Made by a program: the position numbers and the translations under genes. From IMG/VR virus record IMGVR_UViG_3300045972_000138, positions 62,001-126,000 of that record: DNA of 64,000 bases; one strand, given 5' to 3'. The notes under the pieces were generated by a model. That model was not told the origin of the DNA, did no database searches, and was given only the letters and a program-made list of their open reading frames with translations. Shown in pieces: positions 23,774-63,363 of this stretch. How positions within the stretch are numbered: position 1 is the stretch's first letter; the number at the start of each line of letters is the position of its first letter.

Positions 23774-23784
23774 TTGCATTGCAA
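23774..23784. promoter_or_regulatory. TTGC-N3-GCAA palindrome (PhaR-like, weak)
   Basis: TTGCATTGCAA between divergent EAL and hsp20 genes. Confidence 0.3.
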
Positions 23785-23824
23785 TAAATTCTATTATAAA
23801 ATATTATAATCACTATTTTACAGT

Positions 23825-23832
23825 GATAAATA
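23825..23832 (+). promoter_or_regulatory. Late promoter box GATAAATA
   Basis: Upstream of structured hsp20 leader. Confidence 0.6.
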
Positions 23833-23914
23833 AAATTGTAAGATGCTCATAGGGAGGTTTTACAACAGTATCCACTGGATACAAAATTTAGACTTGCTAT
23901 TAAAGGAGTTAATT

Positions 23915-24328
23915 ATGTCTATAAATCAAGAGTTTGATCGTTTATTCAACCACCTCAACCAGGTAGCTGTAGGATTTGGTCCCATTTTCCGTGACTTCCA
24001 ACACACAAGCAGCAACTATCCTCCACACAACATTGTTACTATTTCCGATAACGAGTTCAATCTAGAACTTGCTGTTGCCGGATTTAAGAAAAGTGAAGTT
24101 GTGATCCAGGAAGAAAATGGTATGTTGACCATCAAGGCAGATAAGGACACACAGAATGAATTACAACAATACCAGTACAAAGGTATTGCTAACCGTTCTT
24201 TCTCTAAATCTTTCCGCATTGCCGAATCCTTCGAGATTCAAGGTGCTAATTTAGAAGATGGAATCTTAACAATTAAGTTTGTTAAAAATGTTCCTGTGAC
24301 TAAACCTAAGTTGATTGCAATCAGCTAA
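23915..24328 (+). CDS. Small heat-shock protein Hsp20 (IbpA-like)
   Basis: NYPPHNIV, ELAVAGF, YKGIANRSF, ANLEDGILTI; start reassigned using AAGGAG. Confidence 0.92.
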   Translation: MSINQEFDRLFNHLNQVAVGFGPIFRDFQHTSSNYPPHNIVTISDNEFNLELAVAGFKKSEVVIQEENGMLTIKADKDTQNELQQYQYKGIANRSFSKSFRIAESFEIQGANLEDGILTIKFVKNVPVTKPKLIAIS

Positions 24329-24337
24329 CAACATAGG

Positions 24338-24366
24338 TTGACCTGCGCCCCGGGAATACGTATAAT
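24338..24366 (+). promoter_or_regulatory. sigma70-type promoter of clpS with inverted repeat around -10
   Basis: TTGACC-17-TATAAT; CCCCGGGAATAC / GTATTACCTGGGG. Confidence 0.75.
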
Positions 24367-24392
24367 AAGGTATTACCTGGGGTCTAACTATT

Positions 24393-24701
24393 ATGTCACA
24401 AGATATTGAAGTCATTGAAAAAATAGATGAGCAAATCAAGGTGCATATTCCAAATATGTACAAAGTGATTTTGCACAACGATGACACCACGACTGTGGAT
24501 TTTGTAATCCACGTGCTAACACGCATCTTTCACAAGCAAATGGAAGACGCACTGGTGTTGACACAAACAATTCACGAAGAAGGCCAAGGCATTGCAGGCG
24601 GCCCGTATACACGCGAAATAGCAGAAGAAAAAACACTCGAAACAATTGGATCAGCTAGGGCTAACAATTTCCCACTTGTCGCAACGTTCGAAGAAGTATA
24701 A
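24393..24701 (+). CDS. clpS: N-degron adaptor ClpS
   Basis: MYKVILHNDDTTTVDFVIHVL..IF, IHEEGQGI, YTREIAEEK, FPL. Confidence 0.9.
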   Translation: MSQDIEVIEKIDEQIKVHIPNMYKVILHNDDTTTVDFVIHVLTRIFHKQMEDALVLTQTIHEEGQGIAGGPYTREIAEEKTLETIGSARANNFPLVATFEEV

Positions 24702-24727: not shown

Positions 24728-25762
24728 ATGACACAAAATTTAATTCAAATTAAAGCATTCCTGGGAAAATATTATCAAGAGTTAGCATATTCTGTTCAGC
24801 AGGAAAAATATGCCAAAGCTAACCTGCTCAAGTTCTTTGAGCAACGGTTTGTTATTCAAAGTAATAAAGTGCAAATGATTGTAGACCCGTCCCTTAAGGG
24901 ATTGGTTGCAGTTGTAAACGGAAATGAGCTACTTGTAAGCCAAGAATTGCACGACCACGAATATATTAACATAACAAATTCTGCAGATTCTGGTAATTTA
25001 GGTAATAATCCTAAGAGTCTATATACACCTGAAATATTTTCGTCTATGGCATATTTGATTTGCCAAAATCATACAATGCTAACAATAGTAGGCGAAATCG
25101 AAGAACCAATCTACATACGTTATAAGTGTGAATTTGAAACATTTCAGAATTCTGTAGTTATAGTAAATGTGTCAGAAGGCATAGATGTAGAGATTGTTGA
25201 AGAATATGAAAGCTTTTGTGCTATAAATTCTGTAATAAACTACATTATCCAAGAAGGTGCTAGAGTAAACGTATCTACGTTCTACCAGAATCATTTATCT
25301 GCATTGTCATTCTGTCTACGGAATGTAATTGTGCAAGACAACGCAAAGTACAGTCATATATTGTTTGGTAAAGGTTCATCTAACGTATTAGATGAAACCA
25401 GAGTACAGCCAAACAATAGATCATCGGTTGAACTGCTAGGATGTATGAATCCGGGGCAGCAGGAATTCCACACAATTGTAGGTGTGCTTCCCGGTGCACA
25501 AGATTATAACTTTTTCTTAGATCATAGGCATATGGTGTCCGGTAAAGGAAGAACTACCTTCACTCCTCTTATCATAGGTCACTTACCGCCTACTGCACAT
25601 ACGAACGTAAGCTCGTTAGTGTTAGATCATTACGCAAGAGGCTTTTGGCCTGAAAAATCGGAGGAATTTTTATCACCTATATTAGACCGTGCTACATTAG
25701 AGAGGACTGTAGGTGTTACCCGTTTTTACAGTAACAAATCTAAGTTCTTGCAATTTCAATAA
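24728..25762 (+). CDS. SufD/SufB-like beta-helix protein, divergent
   Basis: IVNVSEGIDVEIVEEY, YIIQEGARVNV, VIVQDNAKYSH repeats resemble the SufBD beta-helix. Confidence 0.5.
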   Translation: MTQNLIQIKAFLGKYYQELAYSVQQEKYAKANLLKFFEQRFVIQSNKVQMIVDPSLKGLVAVVNGNELLVSQELHDHEYINITNSADSGNLGNNPKSLYTPEIFSSMAYLICQNHTMLTIVGEIEEPIYIRYKCEFETFQNSVVIVNVSEGIDVEIVEEYESFCAINSVINYIIQEGARVNVSTFYQNHLSALSFCLRNVIVQDNAKYSHILFGKGSSNVLDETRVQPNNRSSVELLGCMNPGQQEFHTIVGVLPGAQDYNFFLDHRHMVSGKGRTTFTPLIIGHLPPTAHTNVSSLVLDHYARGFWPEKSEEFLSPILDRATLERTVGVTRFYSNKSKFLQFQ

Positions 25763-33388: not shown

Positions 33389-33985
33389 ATGCAAAATAGT
33401 CTAATCCCAATGGTTGTAGAACAAACTTCGCGTGGCGAACGTTCATACGATCTTTATTCACGCTTAATGAAGGAGCGTATTGTTTTCTTCCACGGCGAAG
33501 TAGAAAGCAATATGTGTAACGTGATCGTAGCACAGTTGCTATTCCTTGAAGCTGAAAATTCAGAACTTCCTATCAGTATGTATGTAAACAGCCCTGGCGG
33601 ATCTGTTTATGACGGATTGGCCGTATATGACGTTATGCAATACATCAAATGTCCAGTGCACACCTATGTAACTGGTATGGCAGCAAGTATGGGGTCGTTT
33701 ATTGCACAAGCAGGCGAACCAGGTCACCGCTATCTTATGCCACGTGCCATTACAATGATTCACCAGCCATCAAGTGGTACACGTGGTAAAGTGTCAGATA
33801 TGGAAATTGATTTGTACGAAAGTCTACGTATCAAGAAAGAGATGACAGAGCTATATGTTCAACACAATTCTAAAGGTGTAACATACGAGCAATTCCAGCA
33901 ATATATGGACCGTGATAAGTGGTTGACAGCACCAATGGCCTTAGATTTAGGTCTTGCTGATCAGATTGTTTCCAAGCGCGTCTAA
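33389..33985 (+). CDS. clpP: Clp protease proteolytic subunit
   Basis: [28 protein letters not shown] (Ser), MIHQP (His), MDRDKW (Asp). Confidence 0.95.
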
Positions 33986-34005: not shown

Positions 34006-34036
34006 AAAAAGCTAGTGAGGAATCACTAGCTTTTTT
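34006..34036 (+). terminator. Intrinsic (bidirectional-type) terminator
   Basis: AAAAAGCTAGTGA-GGAA-TCACTAGCTTTTTT. Confidence 0.85.
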
Positions 34037-34037
34037 G

Positions 34038-34066
34038 TTGACTTTTTTGCTGCGTTGCAATATAAT
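34038..34066 (+). promoter_or_regulatory. sigma70-type promoter overlapped by PhaR-like box
   Basis: TTGACT-17-TATAAT; CTGC-GTT-GCAA at 34050-34060 in the spacer. Confidence 0.7.
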
Positions 34067-34118
34067 TTGCTAAATACATACTCAGTAGAAACACTGAGAG
34101 AAACCAAGGAAACACACA

Positions 34119-34289
34119 ATGTTACAAAAATTTATTGATCATCTTTTACAAAAAGATACAAAAGTACCAGAAGATTACGCACGTATGGTACGCGCAGAAT
34201 ATCGTAATGTCCCATTCGATTATGTTGAATACTTTTTAGAAACCAACAAACGCTTGCCAACACCATCGGAGTTACAAAATGCTTTATAA
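34119..34289 (+). CDS. Small hypothetical protein (56 aa), not in ORF track
   Basis: RBS AAGGA; MLQKFIDHLL...YARMVRAEYRNVP...PTPSELQNAL. Confidence 0.6.
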   Translation: MLQKFIDHLLQKDTKVPEDYARMVRAEYRNVPFDYVEYFLETNKRLPTPSELQNAL

Positions 34290-34464
34290 TATTATCGAAA
34301 AATTAAAACAGATATTTTCAGAGCCATCTGAGCAAAGTAAGTTAGATGCATTCATTGCACAGCAGCAGCCAACATCTGTAGGCGATGTAGAATATTGGAT
34401 TAATGTCTACGACCGTAGACAATATCTTGATCGCTCTTCTAGTTTTAGCTATCACATACGCTAA
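34279..34464 (+). CDS. Small protein, possibly DUF3563-like
   Basis: QSKLDAFIAQQQPTSVGDVEYWINVYDRR. Confidence 0.55.
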   Translation: MLYNIIEKLKQIFSEPSEQSKLDAFIAQQQPTSVGDVEYWINVYDRRQYLDRSSSFSYHIR

Positions 34465-34465
34465 T

Positions 34466-34585
34466 ATGAAGAATACATTATCTAAGGTAGTTCATACCAT
34501 AAAAGATATTAGCGGATTCCTACGCTATCTAAGCGTACAGAGATTACAAAACGCCAGGAAGAACAGCTTTCCTCGCTGGTTCTAA
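34466..34585 (+). CDS. Small basic peptide (39 aa)
   Basis: ATG immediately after previous stop. Confidence 0.4.
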   Translation: MKNTLSKVVHTIKDISGFLRYLSVQRLQNARKNSFPRWF

Positions 34586-34632
34586 TAAAACTACTGTTTA
34601 ATATAAATAGCATATAAAGCAAGGGAATAACT

Positions 34633-35361
34633 ATGACGCCACCATCTAAATTACTGTTAATAGCTGAAGCCATTAGATCACTAGTTGAATATGCTCAGAG
34701 TATTTTACTGAGTATTCCGCTTCAGTATATTTCAGCAAAAGGTGATGGCCATCCGGTTGTTATTTTTCCAGGGCTCGGAACATCCGATGGTTCAACACAT
34801 TATATTAGAAGCTTTCTAACAGGGTTAGGATATAACGTATATCCGTGGGGATTAGGTAGAAACTTAGGACCACGTGGGGGCATCAACAAACTAACATCTG
34901 TAGTTGTTGAGCGCATACGTGAAATATCTCTAGAAAACGGTGGGGCCAAAGTTAGTTTAATTGGTTGGTCGTTAGGTGGAATTTATGTTCGCGAAATTGC
35001 TAAGGCTGAGCCCGATTTGGTCAGACAGGTAATCACGCTAGGTACGCCATTTAAGGGTGCGCCAAATGCAACAAATGTTACAATGTTGTACGAACTATTA
35101 AGTAAAGATAAGAGTCATTTAGATCCAGATATTATTGAAGCTATTGCTAAAAAGCCCAATGTACCATTTACATCTATATACAGCAAAACAGACGGAGTGG
35201 TATCGTGGGAATGTTGCATAGAAGAACCATCTGATATCTCCGAAAATGTAGAAATACCGGGTGCAAGTCACTTAGGATTAGGACATAATACTATGTCTAT
35301 GCATATTATAGCCAACAGGCTAGCTCAACCACTCGGGAAGTGGCAGCACTATAACAAATAA
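34633..35361 (+). CDS. Alpha/beta hydrolase (esterase/lipase, PGAP1-like)
   Basis: FPGL oxyanion, GWSLGG nucleophile, TDGVV, SHLG; preceded by TATAAATA at 34602. Confidence 0.88.
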   Translation: MTPPSKLLLIAEAIRSLVEYAQSILLSIPLQYISAKGDGHPVVIFPGLGTSDGSTHYIRSFLTGLGYNVYPWGLGRNLGPRGGINKLTSVVVERIREISLENGGAKVSLIGWSLGGIYVREIAKAEPDLVRQVITLGTPFKGAPNATNVTMLYELLSKDKSHLDPDIIEAIAKKPNVPFTSIYSKTDGVVSWECCIEEPSDISENVEIPGASHLGLGHNTMSMHIIANRLAQPLGKWQHYNK

Positions 35362-35375
35362 TTGGTAATGCATAT

Positions 35376-35397
35376 AAAGGCGCAGTAATGCGCCTTT
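35376..35397 (+). terminator. Intrinsic terminator
   Basis: AAAGGCGCA-GTAA-TGCGCCTTT. Confidence 0.75.
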
Positions 35398-37826: not shown

Positions 37827-37855
37827 TTGACGTATGCAGTAATATGCATTATAAT
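37827..37855 (+). promoter_or_regulatory. sigma70-type promoter
   Basis: TTGACG-17-TATAAT. Confidence 0.7.
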
Positions 37856-62893: not shown

Positions 62894-62910
62894 ATGTTGC
62901 AATGCAGCAT
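62894..62910. promoter_or_regulatory. PhaR-like palindrome
   Basis: ATGTTGCAATGCAGCAT; 14/17 match to reverse complement of 34047-34063; abuts CATAAATA. Confidence 0.5.
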
Positions 62911-63000
62911 AAATAATATTACAATGCAATTAACACTGTGTTCATGGTGAAACAGTGTTAGCATTATAACAAGTGGCCACAATGGCACAAAGGAAATATT

Positions 63001-63363
63001 ATGACAACATTTACACAACCTATCGATTTTTACAACTACGCAGCAAGCTTCTACAAGTCCTTGCCAAAGACCGTAGCAGAAGGTAAAGAAGTACTTGAAA
63101 AAGTACAAGCAGTAATCACTACTGAATCCAACAACGTACAAGCCACAGTGAAGGCATACACTGCCGCAGCTAAGAGCTCTACTCCTCTTAAGGATTTTGA
63201 TACAGCAAATAAAAAGGCCGCAGAATTAGTTAAGACAGCAACATTTGCATCTATAGTTGCTATGCCTGGCGCTCTTTTTGTTCTTCCTCTTGTAGTTGAA
63301 AAAGCAAAAGAATTCAAAATTGATCTTGTTCCTGCATCTGTTGCAGCACAGTTCAGCATCTAA
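63001..63363 (+). CDS. Ala/Lys-rich helical protein, phasin-like candidate
   Basis: RBS AAGGA; amphipathic helices, hydrophobic IVAMPGALFVLPLVV; long structured leader. Confidence 0.6.
   Translation: MTTFTQPIDFYNYAASFYKSLPKTVAEGKEVLEKVQAVITTESNNVQATVKAYTAAAKSSTPLKDFDTANKKAAELVKTATFASIVAMPGALFVLPLVVEKAKEFKIDLVPASVAAQFSI

What the first reader, a model, noticed from the sequence alone, without database searches (positions are those of the whole stretch)
34038..35361. PhaR-like operator heading a small-gene cluster upstream of an alpha/beta hydrolase: possible phage polyhydroxyalkanoate module
Seen: CTGC-GTT-GCAA (17-mer 34047-63, TTGCTGCGTTGCAATAT) lies in the -35/-10 spacer of a near-consensus promoter, a typical repressor position. 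It precedes three small genes and a Ser-Asp-His hydrolase (which also has its own late-like TATAAATA box at 34602). A 14/17 identical site occurs in reverse at 62894-910. Established: the PHA-granule regulator PhaR binds TGC-rich CTGC-N3-4-GCAG palindromes at phasin genes and is titrated away when PHB accumulates. Inference: the phage senses host carbon-storage status through PhaR, and the hydrolase may mobilise PHA or lipid granules for progeny production. This also points to a PHA-storing proteobacterial host.
Basis: partly seen in the sequence, partly recalled or inferred. Interest (0 to 1): 0.72.

Follow-up and report, generated by a model that had tools for sequence, protein, structure and literature searches.

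The report
PhaR-box promoter and storage-granule hydrolase in phage
A freshwater jumbo phage carries a small-gene cassette whose promoter holds a copy of the DNA site that bacteria use to sense their plastic-like carbon store (PHB), next to a hydrolase whose bacterial relatives sit in storage-granule gene clusters, so the phage may tune itself to its host's carbon reserves.

Summary
The sequence features are real: a terminator, a consensus sigma-70 promoter (34038-34066) with the 17-mer in its spacer, two conserved small genes, a TATAAATA box, a Ser-Asp-His hydrolase and a closing terminator. The third small ORF has no support.

The genome is a ~380 kb freshwater jumbo phage. The cassette and the hydrolase are separable units:
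- The hydrolase is a core gene of the clade with its own phage-type promoter. Most relatives have an IscA/ErpA gene, or nothing, where the cassette sits here.
- The two-gene cassette occurs in at least four other genomic contexts.

The PHA idea still gained support from new evidence:
- The 17-mer fits the published PhaR palindrome (TGCR-N-YGCA, with T/A at +/-7).
- The core is perfect in 6 of 13 homologous cassette promoters.
- The 61-aa gene is a probable DUF3563 relative. In Burkholderiales, DUF3563 genes carry this palindrome upstream in 14 of 24 loci, the same box that flanks phasin genes beside phaR.
- Bacterial homologues of the hydrolase (43-52% identity) lie next to phaC/phaE, phasin or wax-ester synthase genes in three lineages.

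PhaR binding, the host and the substrate are all untested. Verdict: partly supported, interesting and directly testable.

The parts
33389..33985 (+). ClpP protease gene, the conserved upstream neighbour
   Evidence: Pfam CLP_protease, E 6e-67. Syntenic in nearly all related phage loci.
34006..34035 (+). Intrinsic terminator closing the ClpP unit
   Evidence: 13-pair stem followed by a T run. Identical stem in L056, L058 and L063.
34038..34066 (+). Sigma-70-type promoter: TTGACT, 17 nt, TATAAT
   Evidence: 11 of 12 consensus matches. The -35 and -10 elements are kept in most of the 13 homologous cassette promoters; L065, L074 and L075 have variants.
34047..34063 (.). PhaR-box-like palindrome, core TGCGTTGCA at 34051-34059, with T at -7 and A at +7
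   Evidence: Fits the published PhaR consensus. The core is perfect in 6 of 13 cassette promoters. The same box lies upstream of bacterial DUF3563 and phasin genes.
34071..34076 (+). Phage-type TAAATA promoter box, 4 nt after the -10
   Evidence: ATAAATA is the most enriched upstream 7-mer in the genome, 44 observed against 4.2 expected. A TAAATA-type box lies just downstream of the promoter in 12 of the 13 cassette leaders; L075 has it upstream of a TATACT.
34081..34098 (+). Leader inverted repeat CTCAGT-AGAAAC-ACTGAG
   Evidence: One search reports it as a stem on the minus strand. The AGTAGAAAC core is conserved in the cassettes. In G001 the same element lies inside a sigma-70 spacer. Its role is unknown.
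34119..34289 (+). 56-aa gene, first of the cassette
   Evidence: 10 homologue clusters at 55-89% identity. Always followed by the 61-aa gene with an 11-nt overlap. No family match.
34279..34464 (+). 61-aa gene, a probable DUF3563 relative
   Evidence: 62 homologue clusters. PF12086 hits 8 of 38 members, best E 7.7e-4. hhalign against bacterial DUF3563 gives probability 89% and E 2e-6. The model has three helices.
34403..34585 (+). Doubtful ORF (60 aa, or 39 aa from 34466), in a lineage-specific ~170-nt stretch
   Evidence: No homologue in any related locus. Other cassettes carry an unrelated third gene here.
34602..34609 (+). TATAAATA box, the hydrolase's own phage-type promoter
   Evidence: A TAAATA-type box lies roughly 20-40 nt before the hydrolase ATG in most relatives.
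34633..35361 (+). Alpha/beta hydrolase, 242 aa, GWSLGG lipase box, a core gene of the phage clade
   Evidence: Bacterial homologues sit in PHA or storage-lipid loci.
35376..35397 (+). Intrinsic terminator closing the unit
   Evidence: 9-pair stem with 5 GC pairs.
62895..62909 (.). Second PhaR-box-like palindrome, TGTTGCAATGCAGCA, abutting an ATAAATA box upstream of gene 63001-63363
   Evidence: The orthologous site is kept in G001 and G003; an identical 15-mer in G002 lies upstream of a 61-aa-like gene.
23775..23783 (.). Further core copy, TGCATTGCA, in the intergenic region upstream of the Hsp20-ClpS genes
   Evidence: The flank at -7 does not fit. Hsp20 and ClpS are confirmed.

Best explanation
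Shown:
- Bases 34006-35397 form one terminator-bounded transcription unit in a ~380 kb freshwater jumbo phage.
- Its front part is a mobile two-gene cassette (a 56-aa protein plus a DUF3563-like 61-aa protein). The cassette is driven by a consensus sigma-70 promoter followed 4 nt later by a phage-type TAAATA promoter.
- The spacer of the sigma-70 promoter holds a palindrome, TGCG-T-TGCA with T/A at +/-7. It is indistinguishable from the operator of the PHB-granule regulator PhaR.
- The hydrolase is a separate, clade-wide core gene with its own TAAATA-type promoter. It derives from an alpha/beta-proteobacterial hydrolase family that lives beside phaC/phaE, phasin and wax-ester synthase genes.

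Inferred:
- In a host without nascent PHB, host PhaR occupies the spacer and blocks early transcription of the cassette and, in this lineage, read-through into the hydrolase.
- When PhaR is drawn onto granules, the promoter opens.
- The hydrolase most likely acts on storage inclusions: PHA, its oligomers, or neutral-lipid bodies.
For: Anatomy:
- Features and coordinates.
- Genome size and source: a 237.6 kb record rated 62% complete, with complete relatives of 360-385 kb bearing terminal repeats, from pond, wetland and lake samples.

Cassette:
- The gene pair is conserved and found in at least four other contexts.
- Promoter alignments.

Operator:
- Published PhaR sites and consensus: PMC12542648 and PMC12849132.
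- The core is perfect in 6 of 13 cassette promoters and has one mismatch in 3 more.
- The 15-mer T-N2-TGCRNYGCA-N2-A occurs 17 times in five phage genomes, against 2 for the reversed control. By my reading of the contexts, about half of the sites are intergenic.
- No PhaR DNA-binding domain is encoded by the phages.

Link to bacteria:
- 61-aa family against DUF3563: hhalign probability 89% and Pfam hits.
- DUF3563 genes of Burkholderiales have the core within 200 nt upstream in 14 of 24 loci. Each of the 63 control palindromes scores 0-2 sites.
- The same genomes have phaR beside a phasin gene that carries two such boxes.

Hydrolase:
- At least 582 bacterial homologues.
- phaC-GNAT-phasin-DUF445-hydrolase clusters in Hyphomicrobiales and phaC-GNAT-hydrolase in Sphingomonadales; 25 of 80 loci carry such genes.
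- RefSeq names PhaE, phasin and WS/DGAT as neighbours.
- PhaR cores upstream of the bacterial hydrolase in 12 of 80 loci, against 0-3 sites for each composition-matched palindrome.
Against: - No binding data exist, and the one in-silico PhaR-DNA job was not folded.
- The host is unknown. The phage is 39% G+C, while the bacteria carrying hydrolase homologues are mostly above 55%; the lowest Burkholderiales locus seen was 43%.
- Three to four cassette promoters have the half-sites one base further apart and one has none. A dimeric repressor should not tolerate that.
- Inside this phage genome the 9-mer core is not significantly intergenic: 5 of 26 sites, P 0.11.
- No related phage has the box in front of its hydrolase.
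- G003 and G004 have five 15-mers each but no detectable 61-aa homologue.
- The hydrolase matches no PHA depolymerase family. Its best solved relatives are family I lipases, B. subtilis LipA and monoacylglycerol lipases.
- The DUF3563 match is below Pfam's threshold.
Confidence: 0.5

Rival explanations
1. The palindrome is the operator of a phage-encoded regulator, possibly one of the cassette's own small proteins (an autoregulated moron or toxin-antitoxin-like pair). Its likeness to the PhaR box would then be convergence on a short palindrome.
For: - Phages usually bring their own repressors.
- The cassette has a self-contained architecture: two overlapping small genes behind a strong promoter with a palindrome.
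- The box accompanies 61-aa family genes in G000 and G002.
- 15-mers are over-represented in several phage genomes.
Against: - The 61-aa model is a plain three-helix protein with no recognised DNA-binding family, and neither small protein has a defence or TA match.
- G003 and G004 have five boxes each without a detectable 61-aa homologue.
- The same box stands upstream of bacterial DUF3563 genes and of phasin genes beside phaR. A host factor explains that more simply.
Confidence: 0.2
2. The spacer sequence is conserved only by common descent or recombination of a mobile promoter cassette, like the promoter-early stem-loop cassettes of T4-type phages. In that case it has no operator function.
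For: - All 13 promoters are homologous, so they are not independent observations.
- The spacing between half-sites varies.
- The core shows no significant intergenic bias in G000.
- The cassette sits behind different terminators in different contexts.
Against: - Within the spacer the variable positions avoid TGC and GCA, while the flanks drift from TTTTT to AAAAT to AATCA.
- The distantly related G002 gene (26% identity) keeps the box at a different place relative to its sigma-70 promoter.
- Independent bacterial DUF3563 genes carry the box.
Confidence: 0.15
3. The hydrolase is a general esterase or lipase used for something unrelated to storage polymers, such as membrane lipid turnover, lysis or detoxification. 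Its neighbours in bacteria would then be coincidental.
For: - Sequence and fold matches are generic: Hydrolase_4, PGAP1 and palmitoyl thioesterase at weak scores, with family I lipases, LipA and monoacylglycerol lipases as best structures.
- 55 of the 80 bacterial loci show no PHA gene within 3 kb.
- In phages it sits among ClpP, IscA and MazG genes, not PHA genes.
Against: - Association with phaC/phaE, phasin or WS/DGAT genes in three separate lineages: Hyphomicrobiales, Sphingomonadales and Burkholderiaceae.
- PhaR cores upstream in 12 of 80 loci, several of them paired.
Confidence: 0.3

Closest known systems
PhaR (AniA) operators at phasin and depolymerase promoters of C. necator, S. meliloti, B. 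diazoefficiens, P. denitrificans and R. sphaeroides
   Same: - The 9-bp palindrome TGCR-N-YGCA with conserved T/A at +/-7.
- A position overlapping core promoter elements.
- Verified single-site examples exist, SMa1961 and mmgR.
   Different: - It lies in a phage genome of 39% G+C.
- It is a single site, not the paired sites of phasin promoters.
- Some homologous promoters have the half-sites one base further apart.
- Binding is untested.
Phage morons and mobile promoter-early stem-loop cassettes of T4-type phages (from my own knowledge: Arbiol et al. 2010, not checked here)
   Same: - A terminator stem-loop, an early sigma-70 promoter and small ORFan genes, inserted between conserved genes.
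- The same cassette occurs in different contexts.
   Different: - Only one copy of this promoter type is in the 237 kb available, with one loosely similar promoter at G000:8772.
- The terminators differ between contexts, so the mobile unit seems to start at the -35.
DUF3563 (PF12086) small proteins of Burkholderiales
   Same: - Length of about 50-60 aa and a helical build.
- Profile-profile probability of 89% over 48 columns.
- The same palindrome upstream.
   Different: - Scores are below Pfam's gathering threshold.
- The phage version is paired with a second 56-aa gene.
- Function is unknown for both, and no paper in the library mentions the family.
Family I bacterial lipases (Burkholderia and Pseudomonas I.1/I.2, B. 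subtilis LipA) and monoacylglycerol lipases
   Same: - Alpha/beta fold with a G-x-S-x-G nucleophile elbow and a Ser-Asp-His triad.
- Profile E 4e-11 to 1qge and 1cvl over the N-terminal half; Foldseek E about 1e-8.
   Different: - Only 15-23% identity.
- An N-terminal 30-residue helix instead of a signal peptide.
- A different C-terminal half.
- Genomic context of storage-granule genes rather than secretion or foldase genes.
Jumbo phages related to Pseudomonas phage PA5oct and the Rak2-like group
   Same: - The DNA polymerase exonuclease subunit is 35-39% identical.
- Genome size class, and TATAAATA-like promoter boxes that resemble the T4 late promoter (the T4 comparison is from my own knowledge).
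   Different: - No nucleotide similarity to any cultured phage.
- The hydrolase is absent from cultured phages apart from a weak partial hit.

Membership tests
PhaR operator (PhaR box) | Palindromic core TGCR-N-YGCA with a single central base | tested here: met
   34051-34059 reads TGCGTTGCA and 62898-62906 reads TGCAATGCA, compared with the consensus.
PhaR operator (PhaR box) | Conserved T at -7 and A at +7 from the centre (C. necator logo) | tested here: met
   T at 34048 and A at 34062. Overall 15 of 17 positions fit YTKNTGCRNYGCANMAR.
PhaR operator (PhaR box) | Overlaps or abuts -35/-10 promoter elements | tested here: met
   It lies in the 17-nt spacer of TTGACT/TATAAT. The second site abuts an ATAAATA box.
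PhaR operator (PhaR box) | Conserved in orthologous promoters | tested here: inconclusive
   Of 13 promoters, 6 are perfect, 3 have one mismatch, 3 have altered spacing and 1 is lost.
PhaR operator (PhaR box) | Bound by PhaR and released by PHB | not testable with these tools
   The complex-prediction job with a Burkholderiales PhaR and the operator was not folded.
PhaR operator (PhaR box) | The host encodes PhaR | not testable with these tools
   The host is unknown. The phages themselves encode no PF07879 domain.
PHA depolymerases (intracellular PhaZ, Esterase_PHB PF10503, 3HB-oligomer hydrolase) | Sequence membership in a known depolymerase family | tested here: not met
   No such family appears among the Pfam, NCBIfam or PDB matches. 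There is no homologue on pSymA, where the depolymerase SMa1961 lies.
PHA depolymerases (intracellular PhaZ, Esterase_PHB PF10503, 3HB-oligomer hydrolase) | Serine hydrolase triad with a lipase box | tested here: met
   GWSLGG Ser113, Asp187 and His213/218 are invariant.
PHA depolymerases (intracellular PhaZ, Esterase_PHB PF10503, 3HB-oligomer hydrolase) | Activity on PHB or 3HB oligomers | not testable with these tools
   This needs an enzyme assay.
Storage-locus alpha/beta hydrolase family of alpha/beta-proteobacteria (unnamed; RefSeq 'alpha/beta hydrolase') | Full-length homology | tested here: met
   43-52% identity over residues 1-242 in the 80 listed of 582 matching loci. The phage proteins form one clade on a long branch.
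Storage-locus alpha/beta hydrolase family of alpha/beta-proteobacteria (unnamed; RefSeq 'alpha/beta hydrolase') | Neighbourhood of phaC/phaE, phasin or WS/DGAT genes | tested here: not met
   This holds for 25 of 80 bacterial loci and two plasmids. In the phages the neighbours are ClpP, IscA and MazG.
DUF3563 (PF12086) | Match above Pfam's gathering score | tested here: not met
   The window's protein gets no hit. 8 of 38 family members hit, best E 7.7e-4, below the cut-off.
DUF3563 (PF12086) | Profile-profile similarity over the full length | tested here: met
   hhalign probability 89%, E 2e-6, 48 columns. An Atlas feature hit scores 0.88.
Type II toxin-antitoxin or other defence module | Recognisable toxin, antitoxin or defence domains | tested here: not met
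   No PADLOC, Pfam, PHROG or NCBIfam match for either small protein.

The most novel reading that the evidence does not exclude
A whole clade of 360-390 kb freshwater jumbo phages has wired a subset of its promoters to the host's PHB-granule sensor PhaR. These are the DUF3563-like cassette, the conserved 120-aa gene at 63001 and perhaps the Hsp20-ClpS unit. The clade also keeps a storage-inclusion hydrolase as a core gene. If so, phage gene expression and resource mobilisation are gated by the host's carbon-storage state. As a corollary, DUF3563 would be an unrecognised small-protein member of the PhaR regulon in Burkholderiales.
Probability: 0.35. Interest if true: 0.85.

Novelty: new variant of a known kind. 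Interest (0 to 1): 0.76.

Why it matters
Phages are known to listen to host regulators such as LexA or quorum signals, and to carry metabolic genes. I found no report of a phage promoter carrying a PhaR box, or of a phage-borne enzyme from PHA or storage-lipid loci.

If the reading is true, it has three consequences:
- It links infection strategy to the host's carbon reserve in abundant freshwater proteobacteria.
- It points to a function for an uncharacterised bacterial hydrolase family that sits beside phaC, phasin and WS/DGAT genes.
- It adds DUF3563 to the PhaR regulon.

All three can be tested with standard EMSA, reporter and enzyme assays in Cupriavidus necator or a related PHB-accumulating model strain.

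Tried and rejected
Motif searches that proved uninformative:
- The 17-mer with up to 3 mismatches gives a chance-level second hit.
- CTGC-N3/4-GCAG with at most 1 mismatch is non-specific: 70 hits against 36 in shuffles.
- TGC-N3/4-GCA is not enriched between genes: 16 sites against 24 expected.
- The 9-mer core is not significantly intergenic in G000, P 0.11.
- TGC-N3/4-GCA directly before YATAAT occurs 3 times in G000 and 0-2 times in relatives, so it is not a general promoter class.

Protein leads that failed:
- A remembered likeness of the 56-aa protein to YbdD/YjiX: PF04328 gives no match.
- A phage-encoded PhaR: no PF07879 match in five genomes.
- The 120-aa protein behind the second site as a phasin: hhalign probability 0.1%.
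- SMa1961 as a homologue of the hydrolase: no pSymA hit.
- Paralogy of the 56-aa and 61-aa genes: not shown.
- PHA genes next to bacterial DUF3563 genes: none within 1.5 kb.

Searches and jobs that returned nothing:
- Rfam on the region.
- PADLOC.
- The terminator-promoter pattern in viral contigs.
- The 56-aa profile in metagenome contigs.
- A literature check for C. necator granule hydrolases A0671 and B1632, which I recalled from memory.
- The PhaR-plus-operator complex was not folded.
- The leader consensus fold gave no structure, and two of my coordinates there were wrong.

Considered by eye and dropped because spacing or key bases do not fit: a sigma-54 -24/-12 promoter, a T4 MotA box, an extended -10, and the LexA, CRP and FNR consensus sites.
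Full report
**What is there**

The window is bases 62001-126000 of a 237.6 kb viral record rated 62% complete. Complete relatives are 360-385 kb with terminal repeats. The DNA is found in pond, wetland and lake metagenomes. No cultured phage matches at the nucleotide level. The nearest cultured relatives by a DNA polymerase exonuclease subunit are PA5oct-like and Rak2-like jumbo phages, at 35-39% identity.

- ClpP gene, 33389-33985.
- Terminator, 34006-34035.
- TTGACT, 17 nt, TATAAT, at 34038-34066.
- The 17-mer at 34047-63.
- A TAAATA box at 34071-76.
- A leader inverted repeat at 34081-98.
- Two overlapping small genes of 56 aa and 61 aa.
- TATAAATA at 34602-09.
- A 242-aa hydrolase.
- Terminator, 35376-97.

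No terminator-like site lies in between. Here the sigma-70 promoter can therefore also transcribe the hydrolase.

**What chance explains**

- The 14/17 match at 62894-910 is at chance level as a 17-mer.
- The third small ORF has no homologue.

**Two separable units**

I compared 50 related viral loci. Exonuclease, ClpP, hydrolase, a 78-aa gene, a 410-aa gene and MazG are syntenic in most of them. The ClpP-hydrolase gap, however, holds an IscA/ErpA-type Fe-S carrier gene in most, and nothing in some. Only close relatives carry the cassette there: L056, L058 and L063, and by its gene calls the contig of P0003, for which no DNA was held.

In most of the related loci a TAAATA-type box precedes the hydrolase. 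ATAAATA is the most enriched upstream 7-mer in this genome, 44 observed against 4.2 expected.

The 56-aa and 61-aa pair always occurs together with an 11-nt overlap. Besides the ClpP-pair-hydrolase arrangement seen here, it appears in at least three other settings:
- After a radical-SAM gene.
- Divergent from minus-strand genes near a giant glycosyltransferase.
- After another ClpP, followed by an NT5C gene.

No related phage has the palindrome in front of its hydrolase. The 'module' is therefore a juxtaposition specific to this lineage.

**The operator**

Published work defines the PhaR site as a palindrome with one central base:
- YGCRNYGCR in S. meliloti, with EMSA-verified sites such as ATATTGTGCAGTGCAGCAACA (PMC12542648).
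- YTKNTGCRNYGCANMAR in C. necator, with positions 1-4 and 7 from the centre conserved (PMC12849132).

The window's 17-mer fits 15 of 17 positions, including all the conserved ones.

I compared 13 distinct homologous cassette promoters:
- 6 have a perfect core.
- 3 have one mismatch.
- 3 have the half-sites one base further apart. A fourth promoter, L077, has such a variant next to its perfect core.
- 1 has lost the core.

Within the spacer the variable positions avoid TGC and GCA.

The 15-mer T-N2-TGCRNYGCA-N2-A occurs 5, 1, 1, 5 and 5 times in five phage genomes, against 0, 0, 1, 1 and 0 for the reversed control. By my reading of the contexts, about half the sites are intergenic and next to promoter boxes. 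One of these is an orthologous site upstream of the 120-aa gene in G000 (window 62895), G001 and G003. An identical 15-mer in G002 precedes a distant 61-aa homologue.

Inside G000 alone, the 9-mer is not significantly intergenic. The phages encode no PhaR DNA-binding domain.

**The bacterial link for the cassette**

The 61-aa family is related to DUF3563: Pfam hits 8 of 38 members, and hhalign gives probability 89% and E 2e-6.

In 151 Burkholderiales genomes, 21 carry DUF3563. The PhaR core lies within 200 nt upstream in 14 of 24 loci, 18 sites in all. Each of the other 63 palindromes of the same form scores 0-2 sites. In five of those genomes a single phaR sits beside a phasin gene that has two such boxes 56-60 nt apart. 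The same protein therefore most probably binds both sets of sites. This is the strongest argument that the phage box is a PhaR box inherited or copied with the gene.

**The hydrolase**

It has only weak generic family matches. Its best solved relatives are family I lipases, LipA and monoacylglycerol lipases. The model is confident, with pLDDT 84.

At least 582 bacterial loci encode full-length homologues; the 80 best listed are 43-52% identical, nearly all from alpha- and beta-proteobacteria. The phage proteins form one clade whose bacterial sister group is unresolved.

Genomic context in bacteria:
- 25 of 80 loci carry phaC or phasin genes within 3 kb.
- phaC-GNAT-phasin-DUF445-hydrolase in Bradyrhizobium, Afipia and Xanthobacteraceae.
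- phaC-GNAT-hydrolase in Sphingomonas.
- RefSeq annotation names PhaE beside it in Novosphingobium pNL2.
- RefSeq annotation names a phasin plus a wax-ester/TAG synthase beside it in Caballeronia.

PhaR cores lie upstream of the hydrolase in 12 of 80 loci, several of them paired.

This is guilt by association for a role at storage inclusions. It is not proof of PHA depolymerase activity, and no known depolymerase family is matched.

**Weighing**

- Anatomy and separability are well established.
- The PhaR reading rests on motif identity, conservation and the bacterial parallel.
- It is weakened by the spacing variants, the unknown host, the low G+C of the phage and the lack of any binding test.

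I put it at about 0.5. A phage-encoded binder (0.2) and pure descent (0.15) are the rivals for the operator. For the hydrolase's role, a generic esterase (0.3) is the rival.

Noticed in passing
L008, L011, L013 and most of the other related loci listed, between ClpP and the hydrolase (for example L011:3651-3971): Most relatives carry an IscA/ErpA-type Fe-S cluster carrier gene exactly where this phage has the small-gene cassette (NCBIfam ErpA, E 3e-27). The window also has a SufBD-like gene at 24728-25762, so the clade appears to carry Fe-S assembly genes.
   Followed up: partly
window 23775-24701: An Hsp20-family small heat-shock gene (23843-24328) and a ClpS adaptor gene (24393-24701) follow an intergenic TGCATTGCA core. 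Together with ClpP at 33389, the phage carries a proteostasis set.
   Followed up: partly
window 62920-63000; L079 and L090 at the orthologous place: The leader of the 120-aa gene has a hairpin (cactgtgttcatggtgaaacagtg) that appears to keep its TCATGGTGA loop while the stem changes in G001 and G003. It is followed by the conserved stretch aagtggccacaatggcacaaa. It looks like a structured 5' UTR.
   Followed up: no
window 34081-34098, and G001 (L096 around 1440-1470): The element CTCAGTAGAAACACTGAG is in the transcribed leader here. In G001 the same element sits in the spacer of a sigma-70 promoter before a 61-aa-like gene. It may therefore be a DNA site rather than an RNA hairpin.
   Followed up: no
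window 37827-37855: Another consensus promoter (TTGACG, 17 nt, TATAAT) has a different palindrome in its spacer: ATGCA-GTAATA-TGCAT.
   Followed up: no
G000:C1:8750-9690 (outside the window): The promoter TTGACA-N17-TATAAT, with TGCTTTTGCA directly before the -10, is followed by about 900 nt without a convincing ORF. This could be a non-coding RNA.
   Followed up: no
G000:C1:13484-13784 (outside the window): A perfect 15-bp palindrome, TATTGCAGTGCAATA, sits between an ATAAATA box and an 82-aa gene whose product ends in a PEP-CTERM-like motif (Pfam E 3e-4).
   Followed up: partly
L155 (contig assigned to a Cytophagaceae MAG): This 73.6 kb contig is 39% G+C, and its hydrolase groups with the phage and viral sequences in the tree, although that join may be a long-branch artefact. 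It is probably a phage contig binned into a bacterial MAG.
   Followed up: no
G004:C1:380424-380477 (L089): Two PhaR-like 15-mers lie 39 nt apart in one intergenic region upstream of a 179-aa Cys-rich protein gene. The arrangement recalls the paired sites of phasin promoters.
   Followed up: no
L059-L062 and L077: In other phages the small-gene cassette lies near NT5C (5'-nucleotidase) and radical-SAM genes and a NUMOD3 homing-endonuclease-like gene. It also carries a third conserved small gene of about 61-67 aa that this window lacks.
   Followed up: partly
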